NCBI GenBank assembly: GCA_002269645.1
Contig: NIVC01001346.1
Span: forward strand, 186,001-250,000
Source: Macrostomum lignano
Taxonomy: Eukaryota
Direction of reading: 5' to 3'
Length of the DNA stretch: 64,000 bases
Shown piece after piece: positions 8,436-60,900 of this stretch. Position numbers and translations under genes: made by a program. The notes below the pieces were generated by a model, which was not told where the DNA came from, made no database searches, and saw only the letters and a program-made list of their open reading frames with translations. The first letter of the stretch is position 1. Every line of letters starts with the position of its first letter.

Positions 8436-8727
8436 CCCAAATGGGTTGTAAAATTATTGAGTCTACTTTACTTTGTATATGACAGTCAACATTATCATGT
8501 CGATCACGGTTTTTAGCATGCATTGATTTCATTCAAATTACTAGAAATACATTTTGAGTTTCCTACTTAGACCTGAGACATTGCTGGCCTTTTCTCTGCC
8601 ACTAACTGGCTTCATTGGTAAAGAATTGGTAAAGATATTTTATAAAACATTTTTATACGCTTGTGCTGTGCATGCCTACGAGATATGAATTCTTATCAGA
8701 AAACTGTCATATATACCCGGAATAGCA

Positions 8728-29100: not shown

Positions 29101-32100
29101 ATTCCATATCCGACCTCTCATCTACCATATCCGACCTCTCATCTACCATATCCGACCTCTCATCTACCATATCCGACCTCTCATCTACCATATCCGACCT
29201 CTCATCTACCATATCCGACCTCTCATCTACCATATCCGATCTCTCATCTCCCATGTCAGATCTCTCCTCGTCCTCTGTCCTCTCGTATGTCTTATCTCTA
29301 TTATCTCCGTTCATACATACAATGCCTAATCTCTTTTCAACTCTAATATCTTTATGCTTCTTGTCTTGACGTCTGTTTCTTCTGGCTTTGCCCTCTTAGT
29401 CTTCTCCCTGAGTCTCATTATTGGGTCGCATTCCAATTCTGATTCCATTACCTGCTTGAATTTATTCAAGCTACAGACCCTGCAGTGCCAGGGCTTCTGG
29501 GTAGATGATTAATTTACCGTATTATTCGTTCAGTTTACATACCTACTTATATGGGTTTCTTACTAACAGGAAATCTGTTTTAATGCATATTATTGTTAAC
29601 TAATTAATTGTAACTAAGAGCCTAATTTCCTCATTTCGCAAGGCGGAATTAGCTTTCATTCACCTGTCAGTAATTTGCTTGCATTACTATATCATTTTCT
29701 CTCACCCCGTATTGTATAGTATGCGATGCGTGCTTTGAGAAAAAGTTTATATATGAAGATTTTTTAGTATCTAGGTGCATTGTAGGCAGATTGTGGAATT
29801 ATAAGTTAGGAGCAGATCGCGTGGATTTGATTGATCGCTCATTAGCGTGTTGGAGCATCGATTGAACCAAAAAACTGCTCAATATTAGGCCTGGCTAATT
29901 ACAATAAGATTGTCTAAAAAGTATGTTTTTGTGGGTTTAGCGCCAAAATCAGCATGTTCAAAGTGTACATGTGAGTGGCTAGCGCCAAAATCAGCATGAT
30001 CAAAGTGTACATGTGAGTGGCTAGCGCCAAAATCAGCATGTTCAAAGTGTACATGTGAGTGGCTGGCGCCTAAATCATCATTTTCAAAGTGTACATGTGA
30101 GTGACTAGCGCCAAAATCAGCATGTTCAAAGTGTACATGTGAGTGGCTAGCGCCAAAATCATCATTTTCAAAGTGTACATGTGAGTGGCTGGCGCCAAAA
30201 TCATGTTCAAAGTGTACATGTGAGTGGCTGGCGCCAAAATCATGTTCAAAGTGTACATGTGAGTGGCTGGCGCCAAAATCATCATGTTCAAAGTGTGCAT
30301 GTGAGTGGCTGGCGCCAAAATCAGCATGTTCAAAGTGTACATGTGAGTGGCTGGCGCCAAAATCATCATGTTCAAAGTGTACATGTGAGTGGCTGGCGCC
30401 AAAATCAGCATGTTCAAAGTGTACATGTGAGTGGCTGGCGCCAAAATCAGCATGTTCAAAGTGTACATGTGAGTGGCTGGCGCCAAAATCATCATGTTCA
30501 AAGTGTACATGTGAGTGGCTGGCGCCAAAATCAGCATGTTTGGATTGTCTGCAAGATCGTAGAAAAATGGTTTGTCAGCTGTCTTATTCTTAAATCGCTT
30601 AAAAATACATGTACATACATGTACATTTCCAATGCATTTACTAACTAAGCTGGAGAGAACCTGTTGTCAAATGTGCCTTACCTCAACCTATAGTATTTAT
30701 ATAATATATATTCAATCTAATAGCAAGCAACTGATACTAAGAATTAGACAAGCTCTTAAACAAAAAAGCCACAATGACAATAACTAACAGGCTACGCCTA
30801 CTGCGGCCCAAGACGGGCCACAGTCTCCGCAGTTGATGATGTTGTTAGCAGTTTTGGCCTAACGGCCAGGCCGCCAGCCTTGTCTAACTCAACTAGGCAG
30901 CGCCGCGACTCTGCTGCAGGTATTTCTTGATCGCGTTTTTTTCTCATAAAAACTACAGAAAGAAGACACGACCTTGGAGGTTTTTAGGTTGAGACAAGAT
31001 TAAAATTAGACAAGCGAGCTTAATTGAGTCTTATGTGTTTCCCTATGCGTCGCCAGAGTGTTTGCAGTTTTTTCCCACTGATTTCTCTTGCTCTCTCAGT
31101 CTGTCAGTCTGTATAACTCGAAAATTTTGGTTCCATGCATTTATTTAATCTATTAAGAGTGGGCGGCTGGCTCGTTGGTGTTTTCCTTCTTACTTCAGTG
31201 TTATCTCAATGAGGTCAATTGGCCGTATATTGCATTCAGTGTAAATTATTAGCTGCACCAATGTTAATGCACATGGTATGTGTTATAATATATTCTATAC
31301 ACACACTGGCACTGGGGTAGGGTTCTACGCATAATTTGATACATACCCAGTGGTGTGTCAAATCTGATGCGGCCTCTGATTTCGTATTTCGCCTTAAAAT
31401 GTATACCCCACTGTCATACTTGTGGTGTTGTTAATTCTTACTAGCTTTAAACGGTGTTTTTTTGTCCGTGTCTTTGTCATATTTGCTGTCTTAAATTCTG
31501 GAATCGATTTTTTATGATTTATATGTGTTATAAGTATCGGAACCCTTTATTGTGTTGAGTTGTTTTTTTTGCTAACAACATTAACCACAATTCCCTGCAG
31601 GTGCCGGCTCTATTGACGAAGAGGGATTCCTGGCGGCTTTTGAACAGGTGCCAAAAATTAATGTAAGTTTTGTTATACCGTTTGGGGCGCCGGGTTACCC
31701 CATTTTGAACAGATCGGTCTTTATCATTACCTCTGATATCCACACTAGTCCTTCATTAGCCTCCCACAGGTCCTTCATTAGCCTCCCACTGGTCCTTCAT
31801 TAGCCTCCCACAGGTCCTTCATTAGCCTCCCACTGGTCCTTCATTAGCCTCCCACAGGTCCTTCATTAGCCTCCCACAGGTCCTTCATTAGCCTCCCACT
31901 GGTCCTTCATTAGCCTCCCACTGGTCCTTCATTAGCCTCCCACTGGTCCTTCATTAGCCTCTCACTGATCCTTCATTAGCCTCCCACTGGTCCTTCATTA
32001 GCCTCACACTGGTCTTTCATCACGAGCGTGCCCTTCGCTGATTCTTTATTGGCACTGCCACCACCTTCCCAGGTGTACAGCAACCGAGATGCCATCGAGT

Positions 32101-35100
32101 GTCTGAACCGGATTCGCGACACTCTATCCAGCAGCGCCTCCGAGGACTGGGAAAAACGTGTCGACGCAATGAAACAGCTGCGCTCCCTGTTGCTAGCCGG
32201 CGGTCCCGAGTTCGAAGACTTTCTTCCCACGCTCCGATCCCTAGCCGTTCCATTTCGAGGCTGTATTTCCGATCTTCGCTCTCAGGTTGTTCGAGAAGCC
32301 TGCATAACTATTGCCCACCTGGCTAGTTGCCTTGGCAACCGGTTTGACCAATTCGCCGAGCCGATTATGGAACCGTTGTTAGCGTTGCTAGGCAACACTG
32401 CCAAGATTGTGGCCACATGCGGAATGGTGAGTCTAATGACTTGTTATGGTGGACTCATCAATGAGAGAATCGGATTGCGAATCTCACCCATGGATAAGAG
32501 AATCGGATTGCGAATCTCACCAATCAATGAGAGAATCGGATTGCGAATCTCACCCATCGATGAGAGAATCGAATTGAGAATCTCACCCATTGATGAGAGA
32601 ATCGGATTGCGAATCTCACCCATCGATGAGAGAATCGGATTGAGAATCTCACCCATCGATGAGAGAATCGGATTGCGAATCTCACCCACCAAAAGAATAG
32701 GAAAGTTCTGCTGGCAAAGGTTAGAGATGGAAATAACTTTTTGTCTCGTTAATAACGGCTCTAACTGCGCATTAAAAATATGCGTTAATAAAATTGCTTA
32801 CTAAAGTCTGAATTAAAGTTAAGACCCGACCACAGACTGACGGTTGCAAATGCTAAAGAAACAAAATATAATAGCAGCATGCAGGTTTTCCAAGCCCGCT
32901 TATTTGTTTAAGCGCGCTACTTTAAGGACTGAGCCAACTCTGTACAGCTTTCAAGCTGAAAAGGTCCTTCGAAAGCTACTTATTTATTTATATAGACCCG
33001 GTGATAGAAAGCAAATCAATACCTGAGCTTATTACCTTTTCGTTAAAGCTGTTATAATTGCTACAGTAGGCCATTAATGTGCTAGGAAGAGAATGTCGAA
33101 AATTTTAGATGAATTCATTGATATAATAATTAAAAATATATGATAAGTGCTGCAAGTTAAGCAGGGTTGGCCGGGGTTAGTACGTTGCTGAATAAGCTTT
33201 ATTGCGTGACCACCTAAGTCACGTAGGAGATCCAACAATACTGACTTTTTAACGACGCAAACGAATTTAATGCGACAGAGAGACGGCTGTTAACTCACAA
33301 GCGCTTCACGTGAGTTGCAGAATCGTGAAAGAGTCGTTGTGCTGGCGCTTAACTTCCTATTATCTTAAGTAGACTAAATAGAGTTATAAATGCTAAATGC
33401 GATTCTAATTCATGAAGTGACGCTGATGCGCTTTAGACACAACTCAGTGATTCTACAGCAACTCTAGCCAGTACGCCTCAAATTGACTCTTTAACGACTT
33501 TTTCTACCGTGAAATCTCGCCGTTTTAGAGTCGTCTAGAGTCGCTTCTTACTATTTTGCGTGTTACCTGCAACGACATGAGGTACCTTCTCCTTTGTTAT
33601 CCATCCACACCCGCCTTGCCATTCACAGGTGTGCACCTCCCTGCTGCTGCGGTACACTCAGAGCCACCGCCTCCTGCCCAGCCTGTTGGCACTCGGCCAA
33701 GCAAAATCGGCCATCCAGAGACGCTGCGTTGCCGAATTAATGGCCGACCAGGTAAGGCAATTATGCTATTACTGTTAATTATTGGGTTTTTAAGGAATGG
33801 AACTCAGTGCCAGTCTCTTCCGTAGGCATATCAAACTTCTAGCACTGTTTTAACTGGATATTTCAATTTCTTTTCGTATCAATTGCCAAAATTTCACCTG
33901 CAGCGCCCAAATCAGTGCCAGCAAGGGGCGCCAAACTGGGAACTGGGTGCCGAAATCTGGCGCCAAACTGGGAATCGAGTGTTAAAATCTGGCGCCAAAT
34001 TGGGTATCGAGTGTTAAAATCTGGCGCCAAACTGGGAATCGGGTGCTAAAATCTGGCGCCAAACTGGGTATCGGGTGCCGAAATCTGGCGCCAAACTGGG
34101 AATCGGGTGCTAAAATCTGGCGCCAAACTGGGTATCGGGTGCCGAAATCTGGCGCCAAACTGGGAATCGAGTGTTAAAATCTGGCGCCAAACTGGGAATC
34201 GAGTGTTAAAATCTGGCGCCAAACTGGGTATCGGATGCTGAAATTTGGCGCCAAAATCAGCGCCAACCAGGGGCGCCAATCGGGTTTACTCTACTATTTC
34301 GTTACTAATCGGACCCGCAGGTCCTGGCCAGCTGGCCTGCGCACGCGCTCGAACGCCAGCTGCCCGGCCTGCTGGACTGGCTGCGCCGCTGCCTCACAGA
34401 CGCCGATCAGGAGGCCCGATCGAATGGCCGGCGGGCATTCTGGCGATTCGGCAGGCAGTTCTGGGCCCAGGCGGCCAGCATTTTAAACGGCTGCGATTCG
34501 CGCACCCGGGCCGCTATTGAGCGGGTCCGACCGTCCGACATGCCGGCTCCGGCCGCGCCTGGCGCCACGGCCGCTTCCAGGGCGCCGCAATCGACGCCGG
34601 CAAGTCGGGGCGCTTCGCCACCACGCAGCGGCCGCGGCGGCCCCAGATCGCAGGTGAGATTTTATTCTCACTGGTTGTAAGGGTGAGATTCTCTTTTCTC
34701 ACTTGTTGATGGAGATGGAGACTCCGGTTGTTGCATCACATCCTCTCACTGGTTGTGAGGGTGAGCTTCTCTTTTCTCACTGGTTGTGAGGGTGAGACTC
34801 CGGTTGTTGCATCACATCCTCTCACTGGTTGTGAGGGTGAGCTTCTCTTTTCTCACTGGTTGTGAGGGTGAGCTTCTCTTTTCTCACTGGTTGTGAGGGT
34901 GAGCTTCTCTTTTCTCACTGGTTGTGAGGGTGAGCTTCTCTTTTCTCACTGGTTGTGAGGGTGAGCTTCTCTTTTCTCACTGGTTGTGAGGGGGTGAGAT
35001 TCCGGTTATTGCATCACATCCTCTCACTGGTTGCAGGGGTGAGACTCCGGTTATTACATCACATCCTCTCACTGGTTGCAGGGGTGAGACTCCGGTTATT

Positions 35101-43184: not shown

Positions 43185-44452
43185 TTTTATTTCTATCCTT
43201 TCCACTTCAGGCACGAGCAGCGAATGAGCTCTATGCAGCGGCTGGTCCGAATGGTCCGTGACAACTCGGTAGACAGCTGGGATGAGAACTTCAAGACCGT
43301 GCTGCTGATCCTGCTGGAAACGCTGGGAGATAATGAGGTCAGTGTGCTCATTTATGTGCTGTTGTGTGCCGGGGTTTGGTCATTAAGTTGAAATTACTGA
43401 TTCAGAGTATCACACTCTAAGTTGTGGTATGGATTTCTTACTGTTGTATGATCATTTCCTGGGTCATAGTATCACTTCGTGGGTCATAGAATCACTTCCC
43501 GAGTCATAGTATCACTTCCCGAGTCATAGTATCACTCCCCGAGTCACAGTATCACTTCGTGGGTCATAGAATCACTTCCCAAGTCATAGTATCACTTCCC
43601 GAGTCACAGTATCACTTCGTGGGTCATAGAATCACTTCCCAAGTCATAGTATCACTTCCCGAGTCACAGTATCACTTCGTGGGTCATAGTATCACTTCCC
43701 AAGTCATAGTATAACTTCCCGAGTCATAGTATCACTTCCCTTCTCTTCTCGAGATTTCCTTCTCGAATCATAGTATCACCTTCTGAGTCATAGTATTGCT
43801 AAATAAGTCCGAATCACTTCCTGGGTCATAGTATCACTTGATGAGCCATAGCAGCACATTCTCAGTCGCTATTAATCCCCCACTACCCACCACAGGCAGA
43901 CATCCGCGCCCTGGCGCTGACGGTGCTGCAGGAGCTGATCAGGGCGCAGCCCCGCCGCCTATCCAACTACACCGAGCTGACCCTGTTAAAAATTCTCGAA
44001 GCCCACCGAGACACCGACAAGTTGGTGGCCAAAGCGGCCGAGGATTGCGCCAAGCACGTGGCCGCCCACCTGCCCGGCGATGTCTGCCTTCGCGTCCTGA
44101 CTCCGCTGGTGTCCGGCGCCGACCCCGGCCTGGCCCTGGCCGCCGTGAAGATGCAGATGCGAGTGGTGCAAGAGTGCGAGCCCGTGCCGTGGAGGCCGCC
44201 CTGCCCGAGCTGTGCCCAGGCCTGGTGCGCTGCTGCGATCACGCCGAGTCTCAAATACGCAAGGCCGCCATCTTCTGTCTAGTGCAGATGTACATGAAAG
44301 TTGGCGAGACGCTGCTGTTGCATCTCAAAGACATGAGCAGCACGAAACGGCGCCTGCTGCAGCTGTACATCTGCAAGGCCCGCGTTGGCACCGCCCAGGA
44401 CGCCGGCGGCGGCGGTGGCGCCGGCGGGGTTGCCCTGCCTCCAGTCAGCTGA
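26198..44452 (+). CDS. CLASP: CLIP-associating protein (CLASP/Orbit-MAST), TOG1-less, about 16 exons, about 1400 aa; apparent 1-nt deletion near 44183
   Basis: Exons 26198-26702, 27627-27752, 30791-30919, 31601-31662, 32073-32426, 33629-33751, 34321-34653, 35571-35888, 36409-36450 (tentative), 38432-38749 (start uncertain), 39716-40125, 40916-41008, 41313-41947, 43074-43134, 43211-43337, 43896-44452; phases match. Motifs: GAGSIDEEGFLAAF, DWEKRV, DLRSQVVREACIT (TOG2); SETSSVCS; TOG3 (LRRVCDIFAKMF, KDPKSPDVRR); C-terminal domain (LKELSNHN, FKTVLLILLETLGD, ESQIRKAAIFCL). The first three exons are less certain than the rest. Confidence 0.93.
26880..27350. repeat. 20-bp minisatellite (GAAGCGCCGCTAATTCTCAT)n, CLASP intron 1
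   Basis: About 23 copies, degenerate toward the left. Confidence 0.93.
28058..29265. repeat. 21-bp minisatellite (CCGATCTCTCATCTACCATAT)n with a 22-23-unit higher-order repeat
   Basis: Variant block ATCTCCCATGCCC starts at 28091, 28574 and 29036; explains ORFs 27906-29369, 27937-29346 and 28052-29314. Confidence 0.96.
29938..30540. repeat. 42-bp minisatellite with GGCGCCAAAA core, CLASP intron 2
   Basis: About 14 copies of GTGGCTGGCGCCAAAATCAGCATGTTCAAAGTGTACATGTGA. Confidence 0.95.
31750..32017. repeat. 22-bp minisatellite (CCTTCATTAGCCTCCCACTGGT)n
   Basis: About 12 copies just upstream of CLASP exon 5. Confidence 0.93.
32458..32690. repeat. 33-bp minisatellite (GATGAGAGAATCGGATTGCGAATCTCACCCATC)n
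   Basis: About 7 copies just after the exon 5 donor. Confidence 0.92.
33920..34280. repeat. 32-bp minisatellite with CTGGCGCCAAA core, CLASP intron 6
   Basis: CTGGCGCCAA at 33957, 33989, 34021 and onward; about 11 copies. Confidence 0.93.
34660..35490. repeat. Composite 31-bp and 45-bp minisatellite with GGTGAG core, CLASP intron 7
   Basis: 31-bp CTGGTTGTGAGGGTGAGCTTCTCTTTTCTCA units, then 45-bp ...CTCACTGGTTGCAGGGGTGAGACTCCGG... units; the array fills almost the whole intron. Confidence 0.94.
36608..37415. repeat. 35-bp minisatellite (TTAGCAATCCATTTTGATCCTTCACATGGGATAGA)n
   Basis: About 23 copies. Confidence 0.96.
37895..38342. repeat. 25-bp minisatellite (AAGAAATCGCCCCTGAACTATCTTC)n
   Basis: About 18 copies; homogeneous on the right, degenerate on the left. 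Confidence 0.93.
38780..39590. repeat. 32-bp G-run minisatellite (GGGGAGAATACTAATGGGGAAGATTGGGTATT)n, CLASP intron 10
   Basis: About 25 copies starting about 30 nt after the donor. Confidence 0.94.
40130..40755. repeat. 34-bp minisatellite (CTAGGGTGAGATTTCCAGAGCTGTTGTGTTCTAA)n, CLASP intron 11
   Basis: About 14 intact copies plus degenerate ones. Confidence 0.96.
42045..42860. repeat. 25-bp minisatellite (CTCCTAGGGTGAGACTTCTCTGAAT)n with 50-bp dimers, CLASP intron 13
   Basis: Alternating A/B units, then degenerate copies; shares CTAGGGTGAGATTTCC with the intron 11 array. Confidence 0.93.
43455..43840. repeat. 20-bp minisatellite (GAGTCATAGTATCACTTCCC)n with 60-bp trimers
   Basis: Lines at 43561, 43621 and 43681 repeat with a 60-bp period. 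Confidence 0.92.
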
Positions 44453-51149: not shown

Positions 51150-54100
51150 TTCCAGCCTGTCTGAGCGAGGCTTCCAGAAAAGTTCTCTGCCGTCGCAGCT
51201 GCACAAGATTAGCATTTTGACATAGTAACTTTGACATCATCATTCAAACTGAGAATCATCATCATTGAGACTGAGAATCATCATCATCATTGAGACTGAG
51301 AATCATCATCATCATTGAGACTGAGAGTCATCATCATTGAGACTGAGAATCATCACAACTGAGACTGAGAATCATCATCATTGAGACTGAGAGTCATCAT
51401 CATTGAGACTGAGAATCATCACAACTGAGACTGAGAATCATCATCATTGAGACTGAGAGTCATCATCATTGAGACTGAGAATCATCACAACTGAGACTGA
51501 GAATCATCATCATTGAGACTGAGAATCATCACAACTGAGACTGAGAATCATCATCATTGAGACTGAGAGTCATCATCATTGAGACTGAGAATCATCACAA
51601 CTGAGACTGAGAATCATCATCATTGATTCTGACTGAGAGTCATCATCATTGAGACTGAGAATCATCACAACTGAGACTGAGAATCACCATCATTGAGACT
51701 GAGAATCATCATCATTGAGACTGAGATTAATCATCATTGAGACTGAGATTAATCATCATTGAGACTGAGAATCAGCACTATTGAGACTGAGAATCATCAT
51801 CTCCCCTCCCCTCACCTGTGTCGGAGGCTCCTCGTAGTCCTGGCTGACAACATAGTGAAAAGTTTTTTCCCGGCCCAACCCAGCGGATCGGAACGACCGT
51901 CCAGCGCTGTCCCTGGTGGACATCGGCGTCGGCGGCGTCGGCTGCTGTCCACCAGCCGCTGCGATGCGGCCAGCTTTGAGGTCCACAATCATGGGCGACT
52001 GTTCGTTGAAGACCCGGTTCAGATTCAGGTCTCTGTTGGCCAGCTCCAGTTTGTACTTTGTCAGCTCTCGCTGCAGTCGCTCGCATTCCTCCTCCAGTTG
52101 GCGCTCCGTCTGTTTTTTTGGTTGTTTGTGAAGGTATTTGACAGGGTAGCGTGTGACCCAGTGGACAACTCAGGAATGGTAGCGGCTGACCCAGTGGACA
52201 ACTCAGGAATGGTAGCGGCTGACCCAGTGAACAACTTAGGAATGGTGGCGGCTGACCCAGTGGACAACTCAGCAATGGTAGCGGCTGACCCAGTGAACAA
52301 CTTAGGAATGGTGGCGGCTGACCCAGTGGACAACTCAGGAATGGTAGCGGCTGACCCAGTGAACAACTTAGGAATGGTGGCGGCTGACCCAGTGGACAAC
52401 TCAGGAATGGTAGCGGCTGACCCAGTGGACAACTCAGGAATGGTAGCGGCTGACCCAGTGGACAACTCAGGAATGGTAGCGGCTGACCCAGTGGACAACT
52501 CAGGAATGGTAGCGGCTGACCCAGTGGACAACTCAGGAATGGTAGCGGCTGACCCAGTGAACAACTTAGGAATGGTGGCGGCTGACCCAGTGGACAACTC
52601 AGGAATGGTAGCGGCTGACCCAGTGAACAACTTAGGAATGGTGGCGGCTGACCCAGTGGACAACTCAGCAATGGTAGCGGCTGACCCAGTGAACAACTTA
52701 GGAATGGTGGCGGCTGACCCAGTGGACAACTCAGGAATGGTAGCGGCTGACCCAGTGAACAACTTAGGAATGGTGGCGGCTGACCCAGTGGACAACTCAG
52801 GAATGGTAGCGGCTGACCCAGTGGACAACTCAGGAATGGTAGCGGCTGACCCAGTGGACAACTCAGGAATGGTAGCGGCTGACCCAGTGGACAACTCAGG
52901 AATGGTAGCGGCTGACCCAGTGAACAACTTAGGAATGGTGGCGGCTGACCCAGTGAACAACTTAGGAAGGGTAGCGGCTGACCCAGTGAACAACTTAGGA
53001 AGGGTAGCGGGTGACTCAGTGAACAACTGGGGAGGGTAGCGGGTGACTCAGTGAACAACTGGGGAGGGTAGCGGGTGACTCAGTGAACAACGTAGGAAGG
53101 GTAGCGGGTGACCCAGTGAACAACTGGGGAGGGTAGCGGGTGACTCAGTGAACAACTTGGGAGGGTAGCGGGTGACTCAGTGAACAACTGGGGAGGGTAG
53201 CGGGTGACCCAGTGAACAACGTAGGAAGGGTAGCAGGTGACCCAGTGAACAACGTAGGAAGGGTAGCGGGTGACCCAGTGAACAACGTAGGAAGGGTAGC
53301 GGGTGACCCAGTGAACAACGTAGGAAGGGTAGCGGTGATCAGTGAGCTTGCGTTCAGAGTGAACTTTTACATATGCTAATGCTCGATCGAGCATCGAATT
53401 TCAGAAAAAAAGGCAATTCAGATATCGAACTGGAGCAGACCTGACTCTGGGCCGCCCTGTCCCCTCGGCCGCCCAGCGGCTGCACCAGCCCCTCGGATAG
53501 GCGCCTGTTGGCGTCGCGCTTCATGGTTCTCAGCTCGTTCTCAATCTGCTTGTTCTTCAGCCGGAGCGCCTCGGCCGCCTTTGCCTGCTCCTCGGCGTAC
53601 GCCTGCAGCTCGCTGCACTCTTTGTTCCACTTCTGTGCCCTCTTCTTGGCCGAGTCCAGCTCCTTGGACAGCTCGTCGGCCACTCGCTCTCGCTCGGCCA
53701 GCTTGTAGGACAGCTTGGCCAGCTTCTCGCGCAGTCCGGCGTTCTCCTCCTCTACCAGGCGGCTCCGTTCGCCTTTCTCGGACAGCTCGAGAGTGACGCT
53801 ACTGCGCATGCTGTCGATCTCTCGGCCAGCCTCTTCTAGCATCTTCTTCATCTGGTCGCGGCTCTCCCGCAGCCTGGCAAGCTGCGCGTCTCGGTCGGCC
53901 AGTTTCCGTTCGAGTTTTGTCCGCTGTTCGTCGAATTCCCGCCGGCGTTTAGCCAGGTCATCGTCCAGACGCTTCGCCGTTTCTTCCCTGTCGCGAGCCA
54001 GCAGCTCCTGGGCCTCCAGACGCTCGGCGGCGTCCTTCCGAGTGAGTTCGAGCTCGCTCTCGTAGGCCGAGCGGACGGCTGCCAGCTCGCACTCGCGCTC

Positions 54101-54199
54101 GTGCTGCCGTTTGAACAGCATGTGCACCACCTGGGTGAGCTCGGCGATCTTCTTCGAGACCCGGTACTCGAAGCTCAGCCTCGGCTCGTTTAGATTCAT
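50983..54199 (-). CDS. FAM184: FAM184-like coiled-coil protein, 3 exons (54199-53441, 52109-51816, 51198-50983), about 422 aa, with Q20 tract
   Basis: N-terminal FEYRVSKKIAELTQVVHMLFKRQHERE and C-terminal YKLELANRDLNLNRVFN resemble the conserved FAM184A/B termini; long E/K/R/L coiled coil; all junctions are phase-0 GT-AG. Confidence 0.8.
51088..51147 (-). repeat. CAA(CAG)18CAA polyglutamine tract in the last FAM184-like exon
   Basis: 18 uninterrupted CTG on + (51091-51144) flanked by TTG. Confidence 0.95.
51240..51800. repeat. 22-bp minisatellite (GAGACTGAGAATCATCATCATT)n, FAM184-like intron 2
   Basis: About 25 copies filling the intron. Confidence 0.94.
52148..53335. repeat. 33-bp minisatellite (GTAGCGGCTGACCCAGTGGACAACTCAGGAATG)n, FAM184-like intron 1
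   Basis: About 36 copies; explains ORFs 51759-53039, 51778-53058 and 52061-53026. Confidence 0.96.
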
Positions 54200-54689
54200 G
54201 CCGAGGCAACCTGAGTGCTGAGTGCAGTTTGAAGTTGCACTGCAGTCTTGCATACACAGTGTAGCTGTCTGCTGCATTAATATTCACAACTGAGAGCGCC
54301 GTCCTCTCCTCTCTGAAACATCAATAGGTGGCGACCCTTGCCTGCAGTGCAACAATAGCCTGTCTGCATCTCCAGAATTAATTGTACGCGCTTCACGTTG
54401 CGTCGCAACCCCCCCCTCCCCTCCGCGTCTTTTACGAAGGCTTCTTGCGCAGCTCGTAGCACGTAACAATTGAGAAAGCTGGCCATTTCTTATCGCAGAT
54501 TTTTCAGAGCCGACGAAAGGGCTTGAGAATTTCGCTCGCCATTTCTGGCGGCTACTGGCGAGGGGCGTCTGCAGTGTCTCTCTGTTTTTTTAATTGCCAA
54601 TTGGCTACTTGAACAAATAAGCACATCGAGAGACATATATTTCCCCGAGTCTCTGCAGGTGCGTAGAAATGAGTACATTTACTCTCATA

Positions 54690-55440
54690 TGTGACTGTAC
54701 ATAATTGTACACAGCAGACATGAGTACCTGCACACTCATGTGACTGTACATGATTGTACACAGCAGACATGAGTACCTGCACACTCATGTGACTGTACAT
54801 GCTTGTACACAGCAGACATGAGTACCTGCACACTCATGTGACTGTACATGATTGTACACAGCAGACATGAGTACCTGCACACTCATGTGACTGTACATGA
54901 TTGTACACAGCAGACATGAGTACCTGCGCACTCATGGGACTTACATGATTGTACACAGCAGACATGAGTACCTGCACACTCATGTGACTGTACATGCTTG
55001 TACACAGCAGACATGAGTACCTGCACACTCATGTGACTGTACATGATTGTACACAGCAGACATGAGTACCTGCACACTCATGTGACTGTACATGATTGTA
55101 CACAGCAGACATGAGTACCTGCACACTCATGGGACTATAAATGATTATACACAGCAGACATGAGTACCTGCACACTCATGGGACTGTACATGATTGTACA
55201 CAGCAGACATGAGTACCTGCGCACTCATGGGACTGTACATGATTGTACACAGCAGACATGAGTACCTGCACACTCATGTGACTGTACATGATTGTACACA
55301 GCAGACATGAGTACATGCGCACTCATGGGACTGTACATGATTGTACACAGCAGACATGAGTACATGCGCACTCATGGGACTGTACATGATTGTACACAGC
55401 AGACATGAGTACATGCGCACTCATGGGACTGTACATGATT
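54690..55440. repeat. 49-bp minisatellite (ATGTGACTGTACATGATTGTACACAGCAGACATGAGTACCTGCACACTC)n
   Basis: About 15 copies; period of 49 seen at 54721 and 54770. Confidence 0.95.
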
Positions 55441-55749: not shown

Positions 55750-56784
55750 TTATTTTCCAATAAACTCGGACAGCCGTTTCTGAGCGCTCGGTTGGCTTCG
55801 CCTGTCCAGATAGGCGGACACCCGTTTACGGAACTCGTTCACAATGCGCCTCAGCGCTGAGTCGGCGCCTTCGTTGTTGCTGTCGGCTCCATCCCGGACG
55901 AGGAGCACCACGGGCAGCTCCGCGCGGTTCAGGCCCGCTTTGGACTGCACCGAGCTGTCCGAACCATCCGGGTCCGCCAGCAGCCCATCTGGAGTCGTTT
56001 GAAAGGAATGGCTGATATTGTAGCGTTTGAATAGTAGTGTTAGATATTAGTTAGTAGTATATTGATTTTCATTTATGATGTGCCACTTAAGACCGGCAAC
56101 TTTTATCTGCATTAGCACAATTTTAAAATAATTCTAATATCTAATTCTAACCTGTTAATCTGTTTGTTAGATTTGTTTATCTATTTGTTAGATTTGTTTA
56201 TGTGATTGTTAAATTTGTTAATTTGATTGTTATATATGTTTATCTAGTTGTTAGATTTGTTTGTCTGGTTGTTAGATTTGTTCATTCGGTTGTTAGATTT
56301 GTTTATCAGGTTGTTAAATTAGTTTATCTGAATGTTAAATTAGTTTATGTAATTTTTAGATTTGTTTATCTGATTGTTTGATTTATTAATCTGGTTGTTA
56401 GATTTTTTAATATGATTGTTAAATTTGTTTATCTGAATGTTAAATTTGTTTACGTAATTTTTAGATTTGTTTATCTAATCCGTGTATTTGTTATTTGTTT
56501 GAATGGTAGTAGTTAAGAAAATTCTCAGCACAAAAAATGGATAGAGTTAAAAAGATTCCTGATACTAAAAACAACAACACGAGATTAAAATACTCGTACG
56601 AGCCTGTGTCTACCTGGAATGTCACCTTGGTACTGGGCGGCGCTTATCAGCTGCAGCAGCAGGTAAAATCCCAGAACTAAAGCCAGTAGGGAGCTTCGCG
56701 TGGACACTGAAAAATGAATGGAAATTTAATTACAAATTTTAACTTTTCGGGATCAACACAGACCGACACAGCGGCTCACTTACT
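55750..56784 (-). CDS. Secreted neuropeptide precursor, 110 aa, predicted to yield LSEFI-amide (TRH/EFLamide-like)
   Basis: Exons: A at 56784 (donor GTAAGT), 56706-56614, 55988-55750. Product MSTRSSLLALVLGFYLLLQLISAAQYQGDIPDGLLADPDGS...SALRR-IVNEF-RKR-VSAYLD-RR-SQPSAQ-KR-LSEFI-GK*: hydrophobic signal peptide, acidic spacer, basic cleavage sites and Gly amide donor. In-frame TGA 11 codons upstream of the ATG. Confidence 0.82.
56155..56480. repeat. Degenerate about 20-bp AT-rich tandem repeat (TTGTTAGATTTGTTTATCTG)n
   Basis: About 16 diverged copies in the prepropeptide intron. Confidence 0.8.
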
Positions 56785-56884
56785 GGTTAGGATTTGGAAA
56801 TTTCGGTAGTAGAAAGATCAGCAGTTGGTCTTCTCTTTTGATTCAACTCCGATAGATGCCGAAGTCGAAGTCTGGAAAGCCTTC

Positions 56885-56920
56885 ATTTATATTTACGATT
56901 CCTCAGCTACACTGATTGGC
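56885..56920 (-). promoter_or_regulatory. CCAAT box plus TATA box, putative core promoter of the prepropeptide gene
   Basis: Minus-strand GCCAATCAG (56920-56912, NF-Y consensus) and TATAAAT (56891-56885), about 100 nt upstream of the first donor. Confidence 0.5.
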
Positions 56921-57469
56921 CAATGCAGCTTTGTGTCTATCCAATAGAGTTAATGTCCTCATACAGTTACTGCATACGGCTTCACAACCGCCCACACCTG
57001 TTGAACTGGCCAAATAAGGACTTGTACAAGACGATCTTTCTTTAGCACAGGGTTTGTCGGAAAAATAAATTAACAAACAGGACACAAAAGCATTGTTTGT
57101 GCTGGGCTGTCTATGCCTAAATGTATTAATTATATGTATTTTAGAGTCACGTGACAACACACCAAGGTAAATCGAGTTAAATTTCGGTATTAGAATAAAA
57201 TTACTTGAACTAATTAATAGAGGCACAACATGTCAGTTCCTCGAAAACAGTCAATTTAAAATGTACTTCAGTATAAGAACGAGTGTACTTTATAAGTGTA
57301 CTGTAATACGAGCGACATCTCAGTTATAAAATAATGTCATTAGGAAAACTCCATTCGTAAGAGAACGGAGAGCTACAGTGAACCCGAACACCGGACAGCA
57401 AACTCAGCTCAAACTCCCCCTATACGTTACACAGCCGTCTTCTTCAATAGGAACGTTGCTTTGTTTGCC

Positions 57470-57912
57470 CACCTCACTCCTCACCCACCTCACTCCTCAC
57501 CCGCCTCACTCCTCACTCAACTCACTCCTCACCCACCTCACTCCTCACCCGCCTCACTCCTCACCCGCCTCACTCCTCACCCACCTCACTCCTCACCCAC
57601 CTCACTCCTCACCCACCTCACTCTTCACCCGCCTCACTCCTCACTCAACTCACTCCTCACCCACCTCACTCCTCACCCACCTCACTCCTCACCCACCTCA
57701 CTCCTCACCCACCTCACTCCTCACCCACCTCACTCCTCACCCACCTCACTCCTCACTCGCCTCACTCCTCACCCACCTCACGCTTCACCCGTCTCACTCC
57801 TCACCCACCTCACTCCTCACTCGCCTCACTCCTCACCCACCTCACGCTTCACCCGTCTCACTCCTCACCCACCTCACTCCTCTCCCACCTCACTCCTCAC
57901 CCGCCTCACTCT
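57470..57912. repeat. 16-bp minisatellite (CTCACTCCTCACCCAC)n, TRPM 3' region
   Basis: About 27 copies starting about 25 nt after the TRPM stop. Confidence 0.93.
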
Positions 57913-57935: not shown

Positions 57936-60900
57936 TCAAAAGTACGCTCCGTGCTGCTGCGCCACCAGCCGCAGCAGAGTGTTGTGCGACTGTCGCATCA
58001 GCCTCCGATTGGCCACGTCGATCCAGGCAACGCGCTCGCCGCTGCCGCCCTCGCGCAGGCACTCGGTCACAACGTCGTCTTCAAAATTATAATTGAAGTG
58101 TTCGTGCAAATTAACCAAGTCGGTCTCCAGCCAGGCGTTGTCGCCGTTCACCCTGTCGTCGAGCAAGCCGGTGTACACTGTGCTGCAGGCCGCGGCGGTG
58201 ACCGCCTCCTGCTGAATGTGCAGCCGTTTGGCGCCCAGCCTGCCAGCGTCCAGAGCCTCGATGCGCTCCCGCAGCCAGGCCCGCAGCAGGTTCTGCAGGC
58301 CGCACTGGCCAACTGTCGACGAAGAAGCCGATGAAGCTGACACGGAGGCTGGACCGATACAGCTCGGCAGGCAGTGCTTGACGTGATACCACGGCAGCTG
58401 CATGCCGCCCCGACGGTCCAGCACCGCCGCAACCTGCAGCACCGGCCGTCCAGCCTTCTTGGCGATGTTCTGACGATCGTCTCGTCGCCAACGAGTGACG
58501 GCCAAGTGGAGGCAGTGGTTGGGACCCCACAGCGGCAGCCGGTTGCGGTCCGGTGCCCCCGGCTTGCCGCTGGGGTTCATCGGGCGGCCGGCCTCGTCAG
58601 TCACGTAGCTGGGTGGCGGCGGCGGTGGGTGGGGTTCCAACTTCTTGTTGAAATTTGCTTCCAATTTCCGCTTCAAATTACTGACTTAGTTTTAATTAAC
58701 TCAAAGAGGCTCATGTATATTCTATTTATTGATATATTTTGTTTAACTCTGACATCGTCTAAATTCAAAACGAATGACAAATGAGCACTAAAGAAACAGT
58801 CGGTTAAAAATATTAAATTAGCTGATTCCTGTAAAAGTGAAACTGAGTAGCTGCATCTTCTTTTGCTAGCGATGGTGTTGATATTTCTGATTATAAAATT
58901 TAATAACTTCAAATGGTAATCCATCGACACTTCATTCTCAATTATTATAATTGTGAAATACATTCACAATGTAGTCACTACATTTTCTACCATTGTGCAT
59001 TTAAATTTCGCCGCTATGCACAAATTTGGTCTTCGCCAAAAATTTTCAAATGCCCCTGGGACGAAAGTGTCCGATTGCCCCTCGGAAGATATGTTCCAGT
59101 AAGTCTGGGACGTAATGTCCGATTTCCCTGGGACAAAGTGTCACTGTACCACTCGGGACGAAATGTCCGATTTCCCTGGGACAAAGTGTCACTGTACCAC
59201 TCGGGACGAAATGTCTTACCGCCCAGCATGCGAGCCCCTGTGGAACCCGCTGCTCGAGTCGAATCCGTTAAAAGCTCCGGCCGCCTCGGCTCTGTCCGGC
59301 CAGTCGGAGCTGCTCCAGACTTCAGGCATCTCGGCCACTCTGGCCGAGCCGGAGTCCAGCTGGTACGGCACTAGCCTGGCCAGCTGGTGGTGCTGCAGTT
59401 TGCCGCGCCAAACTCGCGGCCGCTGCTCCTCCTCGGTCGAGTCCTCGCTGCCCAGATGGACGCTCAAGTCGTCGTCCACCGCGACCGGCTGCGATGTGGT
59501 CCGGCGATCGCTGCGAGAGCCTCCGGACAGCGTCATGGCCTGGCGACGGGTGCGCTCCTCGGACTGCTCGTACTGGTGCTGGATGATGGTCACCATCTGG
59601 GGGGGGAGGGATCAGAATCCGATCGTGAGCATGCATTTGCGAAGGCTGAGTTTGTAACCAACTGAATAATGCAAGCAGCTATTCAATAGCATTTTGATTC
59701 TTCACAGCAACAGAAAGTCTAGAAATTAGACAAAAAATATACTGAAATAGACCCAACAGTCACAAGAACAGACACAACAGACACTAGAACAGACACACCA
59801 GAGAGACACTAGAACAGACACAACAGACACTAGATCAGACACAACAGACACTAGATCAGACACAACAGTCACTAGAACAGACACAACAGAGAGACACTAG
59901 AACAGACACAACAGAGAGACACTAGAACAGACACAACAGTCACTAGAACAGACACAACAGAGAGACACTAGAACAGACACACCAGAGAGACACTAGAACA
60001 GACACAACAGTCACTAGAACAGACACAACAGTCACTAGAACAGACACAACAGTCACTAGAACAGACACAACAGTCACTAGAACAGACACAACAGACACTA
60101 GAACAGACACAACAGTCACTAGAACAGACACAACAGACACTAGAACAGACACAGCAGACACTAGAACAGACACAACTGTCACTAGAAGAGACACAATAGT
60201 CACTAGAACAGACACAACAGTCACTAGAACAGACACAACAGTCACTAGAACAGACACAACAGAGAGACACTAGAACAGACACAACAGTCACTAGAACAGA
60301 CACAACAGTCACTAGAACAGACACAACAGTCACTAGAACAGACACAACAGTCACTAGAACAGACACAACAGAGAGACACTAGAACAGACACAACAGTCAC
60401 TAGAACAGACACAACAGAGAGACACTAAAACAGACACAACAGACACTAGAACAGACACAACAGTCACTAGAACAGACACAACAGTCACTAGAACAGACAC
60501 AACAGTCACTAGATCAGACACAACAGTCACTAGAACAGACACAACAGAGAGACACTAAAACAGACACAACAGTCACTAGAACAGACACAACAGTCACTAG
60601 AACAGACACAACAGTCACTAGAACAGACACAACAGTCACTAGAACAGACACAACAGAGAGACACTAGAACAGACACAACAGTCACTAGAACAGACACAAC
60701 AGAGAGACACTAAAACAGACACAACAGTCACTAGAACAGACACAACAGTCACTAGAACAGACACAACAGTCACTAGAACAGACACAACAGTCACTAGATC
60801 AGACACAACAGTCACTAGAACAGACACAACAGAGAGACACTAGAACAGACACAACAGTCACTAGAACAGACACAACAGTCACTAGAACAGACACAACAGA

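What the first reader, a model, noticed from the sequence alone, without database searches (positions are those of the whole stretch)
55750..56920. Hidden TRH/EFLamide-type neuropeptide gene (LSEFI-amide)
Seen: a three-exon gene absent as such from the ORF track, encoding a 110-aa precursor with a signal peptide, acidic pro-region, RR/RKR/RR/KR sites and terminal KR-LSEFI-G-K-stop; an unamidated IVNEF between basic sites resembles a degenerate second copy. Known: G-K signals amidation, and protostome TRH-type peptides include annelid FSEFLGamide and arthropod GSEFLamide. Inference: a flatworm-type TRH orthologue releasing LSEFI-NH2. I cannot tell whether it is already catalogued.
Basis: partly seen in the sequence, partly recalled or inferred. 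Interest (0 to 1): 0.8.

Follow-up and report, generated by a model that had tools for sequence, protein, structure and literature searches.

The report
Unannotated flatworm fulicin/EFLamide-type neuropeptide gene
A small three-exon gene that plain ORF lists miss probably encodes a secreted precursor whose last five residues would be released as the amidated peptide LSEFI-NH2. That peptide fits the known fulicin/EFLamide ("invertebrate TRH-type") family, so this is a likely new member of a known kind, not a new kind of signal.

Summary
On the minus strand, exon 1 (ends 56784), exon 2 (56706-56614) and exon 3 (55988-55750) join through canonical GT-AG introns of 77 and 625 nt. Splicing assembles the start codon (A|TG) in an ACCATG context, and CCAAT and TATA boxes lie upstream.

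Codon usage and GC3 (0.70, against 26-36% GC in the introns) support only this frame. The intron layout matches the homology-verified GNB5 gene in the same window.

No whole-precursor homologue exists in either protein library searched (5.8 billion cluster representatives; 1.84 billion representatives). The terminal unit KR-LSEFI-G-K still fits the published protostome TRH-type signature: oyster (F/Y)S(E/D)FL-amide, nemertean KR-FSEFLG[AV]-G-KR, arthropod SEFL-amide. A motif query recovered natural multi-copy precursors with FSEFI-G, LSEFIG-G and MSEFI-G units. That family motif occurs once in the window, against 0.01 expected.

A one-gene GNB5 tree places the organism next to parasitic flatworms.

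Not tested: transcription, peptide processing, receptor pairing, and conservation in sister species. Verdict: a probable real gene and a new member of a known family. Orthology to TRH is inferred from the motif only. Interest is moderate.

The parts
56915..56919 (-). CCAAT box (ATTGGCCAATCAG context), about 55 nt upstream of the inferred transcription start
   Evidence: Read directly from the sequence. Function is inferred, not tested.
56886..56893 (-). TATA box (AATATAAA). Its last A starts the only upstream ATG (56886), which would therefore lie outside a transcript that starts about 25-30 nt downstream.
   Evidence: Inferred.
56784..56860 (-). Exon 1: 5' UTR with no ATG. The 5' end (about 56860) is inferred from the TATA position. 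Its last base, A56784, is the first base of the start codon.
   Evidence: An upstream in-frame TGA lies at 56820. The first ATG of the modelled mRNA is the spliced A|TG, in the context CTAACCATGT.
56707..56783 (-). Intron 1: 77 nt, GTAAGT…TTTTTCAG, 36% GC
   Evidence: It resembles the homology-verified short GNB5 intron (GTAAGT…TTTAG).
56614..56706 (-). Exon 2: starts with the TG of the start codon, then codes the signal peptide (codons 2-24 = 56704-56636, STRSSLLALVLGFYLLLQLISAA) and QYQGDIP. It ends with the first base of codon 32 (a phase-1 intron follows).
   Evidence: GC is 55%. Codon log-likelihood is +13.1 bits in this frame only. The mean Kyte-Doolittle value is 2.57 over the 15-residue h-region. 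Ser and Ala sit at positions -3 and -1 before Q25.
55989..56613 (-). Intron 2: 625 nt, GTAGAC…GACTCCAG, 26% GC. It contains a 21-nt minisatellite at 56153-56476.
   Evidence: The long GNB5 intron in this window likewise carries a minisatellite and ends …CTGCCAG.
55750..55988 (-). Exon 3, coding part: acidic spacer, the processing sites and the peptides. Stop codon TAA at 55752-55750.
   Evidence: GC is 62%. Codon log-likelihood is +11.3 bits in this frame only.
55831..55845 (-). IVNEF, flanked by RR (55851-55846) and RKR (55830-55822). Possibly a decayed second copy: an [SN]EF core without the aliphatic residue and Gly.
Evidence: The chance of a second [SN]EF within 80 residues is about 0.014. 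YNEFI-G units occur in natural family members (P0131).
55759..55779 (-). KR (55779-55774) followed by LSEFI (55773-55759): the convertase site and the predicted bioactive peptide
   Evidence: This is the only match in the window to the family motif.
55753..55758 (-). Gly109 (amide donor) and Lys110 (removed by a carboxypeptidase), directly before the stop codon
   Evidence: The processing rules are established knowledge, summarised in PMC7294237.

Best explanation
This is a small, unannotated three-exon neuropeptide precursor gene on the minus strand of what is probably a free-living flatworm genome.

Proposed mechanism, with shown and inferred steps marked:
1. Transcription starts about 30 nt downstream of a TATA box (inferred).
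2. Removal of a 77-nt intron joins A56784 to TG56706-56705, creating the start codon in an ACCATG context. The junction sequence is shown; the splicing itself is inferred.
3. The 24-residue signal peptide directs the 110-aa product into the secretory pathway and is cut after Ala24 (inferred from sequence features).
4. Prohormone convertases cut after RR79, RKR87, RR95 and KR103.
5. A carboxypeptidase removes Lys110, and peptidylglycine alpha-amidating monooxygenase converts LSEFI-Gly into LSEFI-NH2. Steps 4 and 5 are inferred from standard processing rules.

The by-products are a 53-residue acidic spacer, IVNEF (probably a decayed second copy), VSAYLD and SQPSAQ.

LSEFI-NH2 belongs by motif to the fulicin / EFLamide / EFLGamide family. 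Its annelid, arthropod and nematode members activate orthologues of the TRH receptor, so the most likely target is a TRHR-clade rhodopsin-type GPCR (inferred).
For: Gene model:
- Both introns have canonical GT-AG boundaries.
- The first ATG of the modelled mRNA is the spliced one, in an ACCATG context. Exon 2 contains no ATG, and an in-frame TGA lies upstream.
- CCAAT and TATA boxes lie at plausible spacing.
- GC1/2/3 is 0.66/0.43/0.70, matching the GNB5 exon in the same window at 0.61/0.46/0.75.
- Codon-usage log-likelihood is +25.9 bits in this frame and negative in the five others. Only 2.4% of 330-nt segments in the window reach that score.
- One short intron plus one long minisatellite-bearing intron is the same pattern as in the homology-verified GNB5 gene.

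Precursor features:
- The n-, h- and c-regions of a signal peptide are present.
- There are four di- or tribasic sites in the last 33 residues.
- The spacer is acidic, pI 4.05.

Family:
- Motif C occurs once in the window against 0.01 expected.
- The chance that an arbitrary pentapeptide matches [FYWLM]SEF[LIV] is about 6e-6.
- Published family members: oyster (F/Y)S(E/D)FL(M/-)amide, detected by mass spectrometry (PMC8398477); nemertean KR-FSEFLG[AV]-G-KR; arthropod T/SEFLamide.
- Natural precursors carry FSEFI-G (P0128), LSEFIG-G (P0127), M/WSEFI-G (P0123) and YSEFI-G (P0130, P0133). Chelicerates carry LSEFLGGP-G (P0126, P0134).
- In some of these the last copy abuts the stop codon (P0130, P0131), as it does here.

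Taxon: the GNB5 exon is 78.5% identical to Paragonimus and groups as sister to trematodes plus cestodes in a neighbour-joining tree.
Against: - There is no transcript, EST or protein record. No gene with these products is on record, and the species itself appears absent from the protein collections.
- No precursor-level homologue was found. The first search returned nothing at E<=10. phmmer against 1.84 billion representatives gave only two repeat-driven spurious hits.
- There is only one intact copy, whereas most family precursors carry 4-18 copies.
- Spiralian members usually carry one or two extra residues before the amide (EFLG-, EFLGA-), which are absent here.
- No canonical AATAAA was found within 700 nt downstream. 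Only AATAGA (55567) and AGTAAA (55503) occur, and a minisatellite starts at 55440.
- The signal peptide was judged by rule of thumb, not by SignalP.
- A five-residue motif can arise by convergence.
- The donor of intron 2 (GTAGAC) and the -1 base of donor 1 (A) are not consensus.
Confidence: 0.6

Rival explanations
1. It is a real secreted-peptide gene, but the resemblance to fulicin/EFLamide is convergent. LSEFI-NH2, or another product of the precursor, acts on an unrelated receptor. That could be a lineage-specific flatworm system or the F[V/L/I]amide / Mytilus-inhibitory-peptide system.
For: - No precursor-level homology was found anywhere.
- There is a single copy, and it lacks the extra Gly/Ala typical of spiralian EFLG(A)amides.
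- The peptide ends in -FIamide, as some F[V/I]amide peptides do (PMC8398477).
- Flatworm neuropeptide sets are known to be divergent, and planarians and parasitic flatworms have lost several ancestral peptides (PMC13551398).
Against: - The Mytilus-inhibitory-peptide signature is PxF[V/I]amide, and there is no Pro here.
- Glu-Phe-aliphatic-amide preceded by Ser directly after KR is the fulicin/EFLa signature. The match probability is about 6e-6 for the strict motif and about 6e-5 for the loose one.
- The I-for-L and L-for-F variants both occur inside bona fide multi-copy family precursors.
Confidence: 0.2
2. It is not a functional gene. It is either a chance conjunction of an open GC-rich segment with splice-like sites, or an unexpressed, decaying remnant of a formerly multi-copy precursor.
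For: - There is no expression evidence.
- ORFs ending dibasic-x-G-K-stop are not rare by themselves (0.36 expected per window).
- IVNEF looks like a decayed copy.
- There is no canonical poly(A) signal.
- The region is full of minisatellites.
- If the first stage read many windows, look-elsewhere effects apply.
Against: - Frame-specific codon usage is positive in both coding exons independently.
- Sharp GC steps fall exactly at the GT and AG sites.
- The spliced ATG has an optimal context and there is no competing ATG.
- TATA and CCAAT boxes are present.
- The reading frame is intact across 110 codons.
- The family motif is expected 0.01 times per window.
Confidence: 0.13
3. It is a small secreted or vesicular protein that is not processed into signalling peptides.
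For: A signal peptide and an acidic, low-complexity body could fit many small secreted proteins. Pfam finds nothing.
Against: Four basic cleavage sites cluster in the last 33 residues. They delimit 5-6-residue pieces, and the last piece ends in Gly-Lys-stop. That is the standard signature of a prohormone and would be unexplained otherwise.
Confidence: 0.05

Closest known systems
Mollusc fulicin family: Achatina fulicin (FNEFV-NH2, own knowledge; cited in PMC8398477) and oyster Cragi-fulicin peptides (F/Y)S(E/D)FL(M/-)amide
   Same: These are amidated pentapeptides with an aromatic or aliphatic residue, then S/N, E, F and an aliphatic residue. They are cut out after KR and use a Gly amide donor. 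FSEFL-NH2 and LSEFI-NH2 differ only by two conservative changes.
   Different: - Mollusc precursors are multi-copy.
- The oyster gene also yields Mytilus-inhibitory peptides by alternative splicing. No such exons were found within 45-64 kb of this window.
- Fulicin carries a D-residue at position 2. Whether that applies here is unknown.
Annelid and nemertean EFLGamide / 'FSE' peptides (FSEFLG-NH2; KR-FSEFLG[AV]-G-KR), which are ligands of the Platynereis TRH-receptor orthologue
   Same: They share the KR-x-S-E-F-aliphatic core placed directly after the cleavage site, C-terminal amidation, and a spiralian host.
   Different: - They have one or two extra residues (G, GA, GV, AP) before the amide.
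- There are many tandem copies.
- In annelids the peptides lie behind a stop codon of the FVamide precursor.
Arthropod EFLamide (crustacean/chelicerate x-SEFL-NH2; hemipteran TVGTEFL-NH2; chelicerate LSEFLGGP-NH2, P0126/P0134)
   Same: The amide follows directly after EF-aliphatic. Hemipteran precursors carry only 1-2 copies. Leu at position 1 occurs in scorpion and tick units.
   Different: - The peptides are usually longer at the N-terminus.
- They end in Leu, not Ile.
- In Hemiptera and Locusta the peptide is fused to Prohormone-4 by alternative splicing.
- The phylum is different.
Unnamed natural precursors P0128 (JGI 3300013843), P0127 (Logan SRR28981368) and P0123 (JGI 3300005037)
   Same: They contain KR-FSEFI-G-RR, KKR-LSEFIG-G-KK and KR-MSEFI-G-KR units. 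These are the same SEFI core, and in P0127 the same LSEFI string. Their peptide exon lacks a signal peptide, which implies an upstream signal-peptide exon as here.
   Different: - They are multi-copy, with 5-6 units.
- The source organisms are unknown.
- Outside the units there is no similarity to the window precursor.
- They were retrieved with a synthetic query built from the SEFI-G unit, so their Ile frequency is biased.
Polyclad flatworm 'TRH' and 'TRH2' proneuropeptides (Prostheceraeus crozieri; PMC10396302, PMC13551398)
   Same: They belong to the same phylum and are assigned to the same family in the literature.
Deuterostome TRH (pGlu-His-Pro-NH2)
   Same: It is a short amidated peptide cut from a precursor. 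The receptor clade is held to be orthologous.
   Different: There is no sequence resemblance. N-terminal pyroglutamate and the Q-x-P-G units are absent.

Membership tests
Protostome TRH-type neuropeptides (fulicin / EFLamide / EFLGamide) | The precursor has an N-terminal signal peptide | tested here: met
   The n-region is MSTRSS (one Arg). The h-region is a 15-residue stretch with mean Kyte-Doolittle 2.57. The c-region is S-A-A with small residues at -3 and -1. This was judged by rule; SignalP was not available.
Protostome TRH-type neuropeptides (fulicin / EFLamide / EFLGamide) | Peptide core x-[S/T/N/A]-[E/D]-F-[L/V/I] (published core E-[L/F]-[L/F/V]) directly after a dibasic cleavage site | tested here: met
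   KR-LSEFI is present. It is the single match in the window against 0.01-0.31 expected, depending on the pattern. The signature comes from PMC8398477 and from the nemertean sequences.
Protostome TRH-type neuropeptides (fulicin / EFLamide / EFLGamide) | C-terminal Gly amide donor followed by basic residue(s) or the stop codon | tested here: met
   The sequence ends …LSEFI-G-K-stop. Units abutting the stop codon also occur in P0129-P0131.
Protostome TRH-type neuropeptides (fulicin / EFLamide / EFLGamide) | Several tandem paracopies of the peptide in one precursor (typical, not universal: Hemiptera have 1-2) | tested here: not met
   There is one intact unit plus one possible decayed unit, RR-IVNEF-RKR. 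Copy numbers of 1-18 are reported in PMC7294237.
Protostome TRH-type neuropeptides (fulicin / EFLamide / EFLGamide) | The peptide activates a GPCR of the TRH-receptor / EFLGa-receptor clade | not testable with these tools
   No receptor gene was identified in the window, and no assay was possible. This is the criterion that defines orthology in the literature.
Protostome TRH-type neuropeptides (fulicin / EFLamide / EFLGamide) | Detectable precursor-level homology or conserved synteny with accepted members | tested here: inconclusive
   There were no hits at E<=10, and only two spurious repeat hits among 1.84 billion representatives. This is expected for fast-evolving short precursors, so absence is not informative. 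Synteny could not be tested.
Protostome TRH-type neuropeptides (fulicin / EFLamide / EFLGamide) | Spiralian subtype: extra residue(s) between EFL and the amide (EFLG-, EFLGA-), or co-encoding with FVamide/MIP peptides in one gene | tested here: not met
   The amide follows directly after Ile. No F[VIL]-G-[KR] peptide exons were found on either strand between 45 and 64 kb, apart from this one and two isolated non-coding-looking matches. Oyster FSEFL-amide shows that the extra residue is not obligatory.
F[V/L/I]amide / Mytilus inhibitory peptide family | PxF[V/I]amide signature in multi-copy precursors | tested here: not met
   There is no Pro at -4 or -3 (the peptide is L-S-E-F-I), and only a single copy.
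Deuterostome TRH | Repeated Q-x-P-G units flanked by dibasic sites, giving pGlu-x-Pro-NH2 | tested here: not met
   There is no such unit in the 110-aa sequence.

The most novel reading that the evidence does not exclude
This would be the functional TRH-type (fulicin/EFLamide) ligand gene of a non-polyclad, free-living flatworm. It would be reduced to a single terminal copy, have its start codon assembled by splicing, and have been missed by annotation. If so, TRH-type signalling persists in a part of Platyhelminthes where ancestral bilaterian peptides are thought to be largely lost. It would also supply the ligand needed to deorphanise flatworm TRHR-like receptors. As in fulicin, residue 2 (Ser) might be isomerised to the D-form.
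Probability: 0.45. Interest if true: 0.5.

Novelty: new member of a known kind. Interest (0 to 1): 0.4.

Why it matters
Short neuropeptide genes are routinely missed by gene callers, and flatworm peptide inventories are incomplete. Reviews state that planarians and parasitic flatworms failed to yield several ancestral bilaterian peptides, and that TRH-type precursors are so far reported only from a polyclad (PMC13551398).

A confirmed LSEFI-NH2 gene would add a data point for how the TRH-type system survived and changed in Platyhelminthes: a single copy, no extra Gly, and Ile for Leu. It would also give a concrete ligand for receptor deorphanisation and RNAi in a regenerating model group. It would not change the general picture of bilaterian neuropeptide evolution.

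Tried and rejected
- Whole-precursor homology searches gave nothing usable. The two phmmer hits are repeat proteins matched in many stretches.
- Exact-product look-ups returned nothing on record. The exon-3 ORF and two neighbouring ORFs gave no record. The species seems absent from the collections, so no transcript or orthologue could be fetched.
- A paralogue in the window was sought with tblastn and none was found.
- Rfam returned no hits. Pfam returned none for the precursor.
- Literature searches for SEFIamide, EFIamide or SEFIGK strings found no relevant paper.
- The planarian prohormone catalogue has no SEFI/EFIG/EFLG-type peptide apart from unrelated internal strings. Nor do a schistosome peptide paper or the stored part of the multi-phylum peptide sets in the PMC8557429 supplement.
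- Prostheceraeus TRH/TRH2 sequences are not in the held supplement.
- Spliced-leader trans-splicing supplying the ATG was considered and rejected. From memory, flatworm leaders end in …ATG. Joined to the exon-2 acceptor, that would read ATG TGT CCA CGC… and hit a stop after ten codons. Only the cis-spliced A|TG gives the signal peptide.
- Exon 3 as the terminal exon of the upstream 246-aa ORF gene was rejected, because that ORF has its own stop at 57936.
- The ATG at 55988 is out of frame and terminates after 19 codons.
Full report
**1. What is there**

- Exon 1 ends …CTAACCA at 56784 and is followed by GTAAGT.
- Intron 1 is 77 nt and ends TTTTTCAG.
- Exon 2 (56706-56614) is followed by GTAGAC.
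- Intron 2 is 625 nt and ends GACTCCAG.
- Exon 3 runs from 55988 to the TAA at 55752-55750.

The spliced CDS is 333 nt and gives a 110-aa product ending …QKRLSEFIGK*.

The start codon does not exist in the genome. It is made by joining A56784 to TG56706-56705. Exon 2 has no ATG, the frame upstream in exon 1 is closed by a TGA at 56820, and the junction creates ACCATG, a good initiation context. The only ATG upstream (56886) overlaps a TATA box (AATATAAA, 56893-56886). A CCAAT box lies at 56919-56915. A transcript starting about 30 nt downstream of the TATA box would therefore have the spliced ATG as its first ATG.

The mechanical ORF list shows only two GTG-started fragments, so the gene is invisible to an ORF track.

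**2. Is it more than chance?**

The neuropeptide-like ending taken alone is weak evidence. One open frame of at least 40 codons in the window ends dibasic-x(3-15)-G-[KR]-stop, and 0.36 are expected. Several independent lines add to it.

- **Composition.** Exon 2 is 55% GC and exon 3 is 62%, against 36% and 26% for the introns. The steps fall at the predicted GT and AG sites. GC at codon positions 1/2/3 is 0.66/0.43/0.70, the same pattern as the homology-verified GNB5 exon in this window at 0.61/0.46/0.75.
- **Codon usage.** A codon table was built from 505 codons of three Pfam- or homology-supported exons of the same window. It scores the CDS at +25.9 bits in the proposed frame and -14 to -47 bits in the five others. 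Exons 2 and 3 are each positive only in that frame. Only 2.4% of 330-nt segments in the window reach this score.
- **Gene architecture.** GNB5 exons were mapped by tblastn. They are separated by one short intron (GTAAGT…TTTAG) and one long intron of roughly 1 kb that holds a minisatellite and ends …CTGCCAG. That is the same layout as here, where intron 2 holds a 21-nt minisatellite at 56153-56476.
- **Family motif.** See section 4. It is expected 0.01 times per window and occurs once, at this site.

I put the probability that this is a real gene at about 0.85.

Points against are these. There is no transcript evidence. No canonical AATAAA lies within 700 nt downstream; only AATAGA and AGTAAA variants occur, and a 49-nt minisatellite starts at 55440. 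Donor 2 is not consensus.

**3. The product**

- **Signal peptide.** Residues 1-24 have the three regions of a signal peptide: MSTRSS, a 15-residue hydrophobic core LLALVLGFYLLLQLI (mean Kyte-Doolittle 2.57), and S-A-A before Q25. This is a rule-based judgement; SignalP was not available.
- **Spacer.** An acidic spacer follows, Q25-L77 (pI about 4.05 for residues 25-76).
- **Cleavage sites.** These are RR78-79, RKR85-87, RR94-95 and KR102-103.
- **Predicted pieces.** They are IVNEF, VSAYLD, SQPSAQ and LSEFI-Gly-Lys.

By the standard rules (convertase cleavage, carboxypeptidase trimming, Gly-dependent amidation; summarised in PMC7294237), the end product is LSEFI-NH2, with [M+H]+ 607.345 (my own calculation).

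IVNEF carries an [SN]EF core next to basic sites. A second [SN]EF within 80 residues has a chance of about 0.014, and YNEFI-G units occur in natural relatives (P0131). Reading it as a decayed second copy is reasonable but unproven.

**4. What family?**

Whole-precursor searches were empty. The word-indexed library of 5.8 billion cluster representatives gave nothing at E<=10. phmmer against 1.84 billion representatives returned only two repeat-driven artefacts. Pfam returned nothing. This is usual for short, fast-evolving prohormones and says little either way.

The peptide unit itself is informative. The literature unites the following as protostome TRH-type peptides with the core E-[L/F]-[L/F/V], because the annelid, insect and nematode peptides activate TRH-receptor orthologues (PMC8398477; PMC7294237; PMC11890989; PMC3890597):

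- mollusc fulicin;
- oyster (F/Y)S(E/D)FL(M/-)amide, detected by mass spectrometry;
- annelid FSEFLG-amide;
- arthropod T/SEFL-amide;
- nematode ELF-amide.

Nemertean precursors read KR-FSEFLG[AV]-G-KR in tandem (supplement of PMC8557429). KR-LSEFI-G-K fits this pattern: S-E-F are identical, position 1 has Leu for Phe/Tyr, and position 5 has Ile for Leu.

To see whether those two substitutions occur in nature, I spent the last protein search on a synthetic tandem query of x-SEFI-G units. It returned twelve natural proteins:

- P0128: KR-FSEFI-G-RR followed by five YSEFLG-G units.
- P0127: five FSEFIG-G units and one LSEFIG-G unit.
- P0123: WSEFI-G, MSEFI-G and MSEFL-G.
- P0129-P0131 and P0133: YSEFI-G, YNEFI-G, WSEFV-G and YMEFL-G. 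These look like fulicin-type precursors to me; their source organisms are unknown.
- P0126, P0132 and P0134: LSEFLGGP-G units. P0126 is from a scorpion and P0134 from a tick; P0132 has no named source.

Both substitutions therefore occur inside unquestionable multi-copy family members. Some of those precursors also end with a unit abutting the stop codon, as here. Because the query was built from the SEFI-G unit, the frequency of Ile among these hits is biased. Their existence is not.

The encoding contigs are unnamed Logan/JGI exon fragments without a signal peptide and show no DNA similarity to the window.

The family motif, taken from the literature only, occurs once in the six-frame translation of the window, at 55779, against 0.01 expected. 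An arbitrary pentapeptide matches the strict core with probability about 6e-6.

**5. Differences from typical members**

- There is one intact copy instead of many. Hemiptera, however, have one or two.
- There is no extra Gly or Ala before the amide, unlike annelids and nemerteans. The oyster and arthropods also lack it.
- No co-encoded FVamide/MIP peptides were found on either strand between 45 and 64 kb. In oyster and annelids the two share one gene.
- There is no paralogue in the window.

**6. Organism**

The window is eukaryotic and rich in minisatellites. The 186-aa GNB5 exon finds a trematode as its best hit (79%), and no near-identical protein. In a neighbour-joining tree it is sister to trematodes plus cestodes on a short branch. 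From the parasites' side it is their closest non-parasite sequence, at 78.5% against at most 74% for the others.

That supports a free-living flatworm. It rests on a single gene, and the species is unknown.

**7. Is it already known?**

No paper in the library contains SEFIamide or EFIamide-type strings. The planarian catalogue, a schistosome peptide paper and the stored parts of the multi-phylum peptide sets hold no such peptide.

TRH-type proneuropeptides ('TRH', 'TRH2') have been reported for the polyclad Prostheceraeus (PMC10396302; PMC13551398). So the class is known in the phylum. Whether this particular gene is catalogued cannot be decided here.

**8. Verdict**

| Reading | Confidence |
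|---|---|
| Real prohormone gene yielding LSEFI-NH2, a member by motif of the fulicin/EFLamide/EFLGamide family, probably acting on a TRHR-clade GPCR | 0.6 |
| Real peptide gene, but the motif is convergent and the receptor unrelated | 0.2 |
| Non-functional or chance | 0.13 |
| Unprocessed small secreted protein | 0.05 |

It is a new member of a known kind. Interest is moderate: useful for flatworm neurobiology and for tracing TRH-type signalling in Spiralia, but not surprising to a specialist.

Noticed in passing
window 54689-55440; 56153-56476; 57468-57911: Three minisatellites flank or sit inside the peptide gene: a 49-nt unit x15 just 3' of it, a 21-nt unit x15 inside intron 2, and a 16-nt unit x28 upstream. 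They generate many long spurious ORFs in the ORF list.
   Followed up: partly
window ~17830-18400, 8676-9173, 9813-10845: The same ~20-nt array (CAGTCAATCAGTTGGTCACC, read as …[20 protein letters not shown]…) lies in the long GNB5 intron and at two other places in the window. This suggests a dispersed minisatellite family, or one carried by a mobile element.
   Followed up: no
window 17177-19190 (-): A G-protein beta-5 (GNB5) gene. At least three exons were mapped by tblastn, with GT-AG introns. It is 78.5% identical to Paragonimus and groups with trematodes and cestodes in a neighbour-joining tree. It was used here as the internal reference for intron structure, codon usage and taxon.
   Followed up: yes
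window 32028-32804 and 43838-44452 (+): Two ORF fragments, one with a CLASP_N domain and one with a weak HEAT match, probably exons of one CLASP-like gene spanning about 12 kb.
   Followed up: no
window 6795-7421 (+): An exon-sized ORF with two mitochondrial-carrier repeats (Pfam Mito_carr, E = 6.5e-26).
   Followed up: no
window 57936-58676 (-) and 53354-54277 (-): These are the same-strand neighbours of the peptide gene. Upstream is a 246-aa ORF with no Pfam match. Downstream is a 307-aa coiled-coil ORF with only sub-threshold Filament/OVT1 matches. Neither product is on record in the collection. Both would serve as synteny anchors.
   Followed up: partly
L001-L006 (Logan SRR28981368/70/87; JGI 3300013843, 3300013842, 3300005037): Unnamed AT-rich eukaryotic contigs carry GC-richer exons that encode multi-copy FSEFIG-G/LSEFIG-G, FSEFI-G + YSEFLG-G and MSEFI-G precursors without a signal peptide. 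They appear to be unannotated EFLamide/fulicin-type genes of unknown animals.
   Followed up: partly
P0126 (Centruroides vittatus): A scorpion precursor with seven x-SEFLGGP-G units is named 'helicostatins-like' by its source. By motif it is an EFLamide-type (TRH-type) precursor, so the name looks like a mis-annotation.
   Followed up: no
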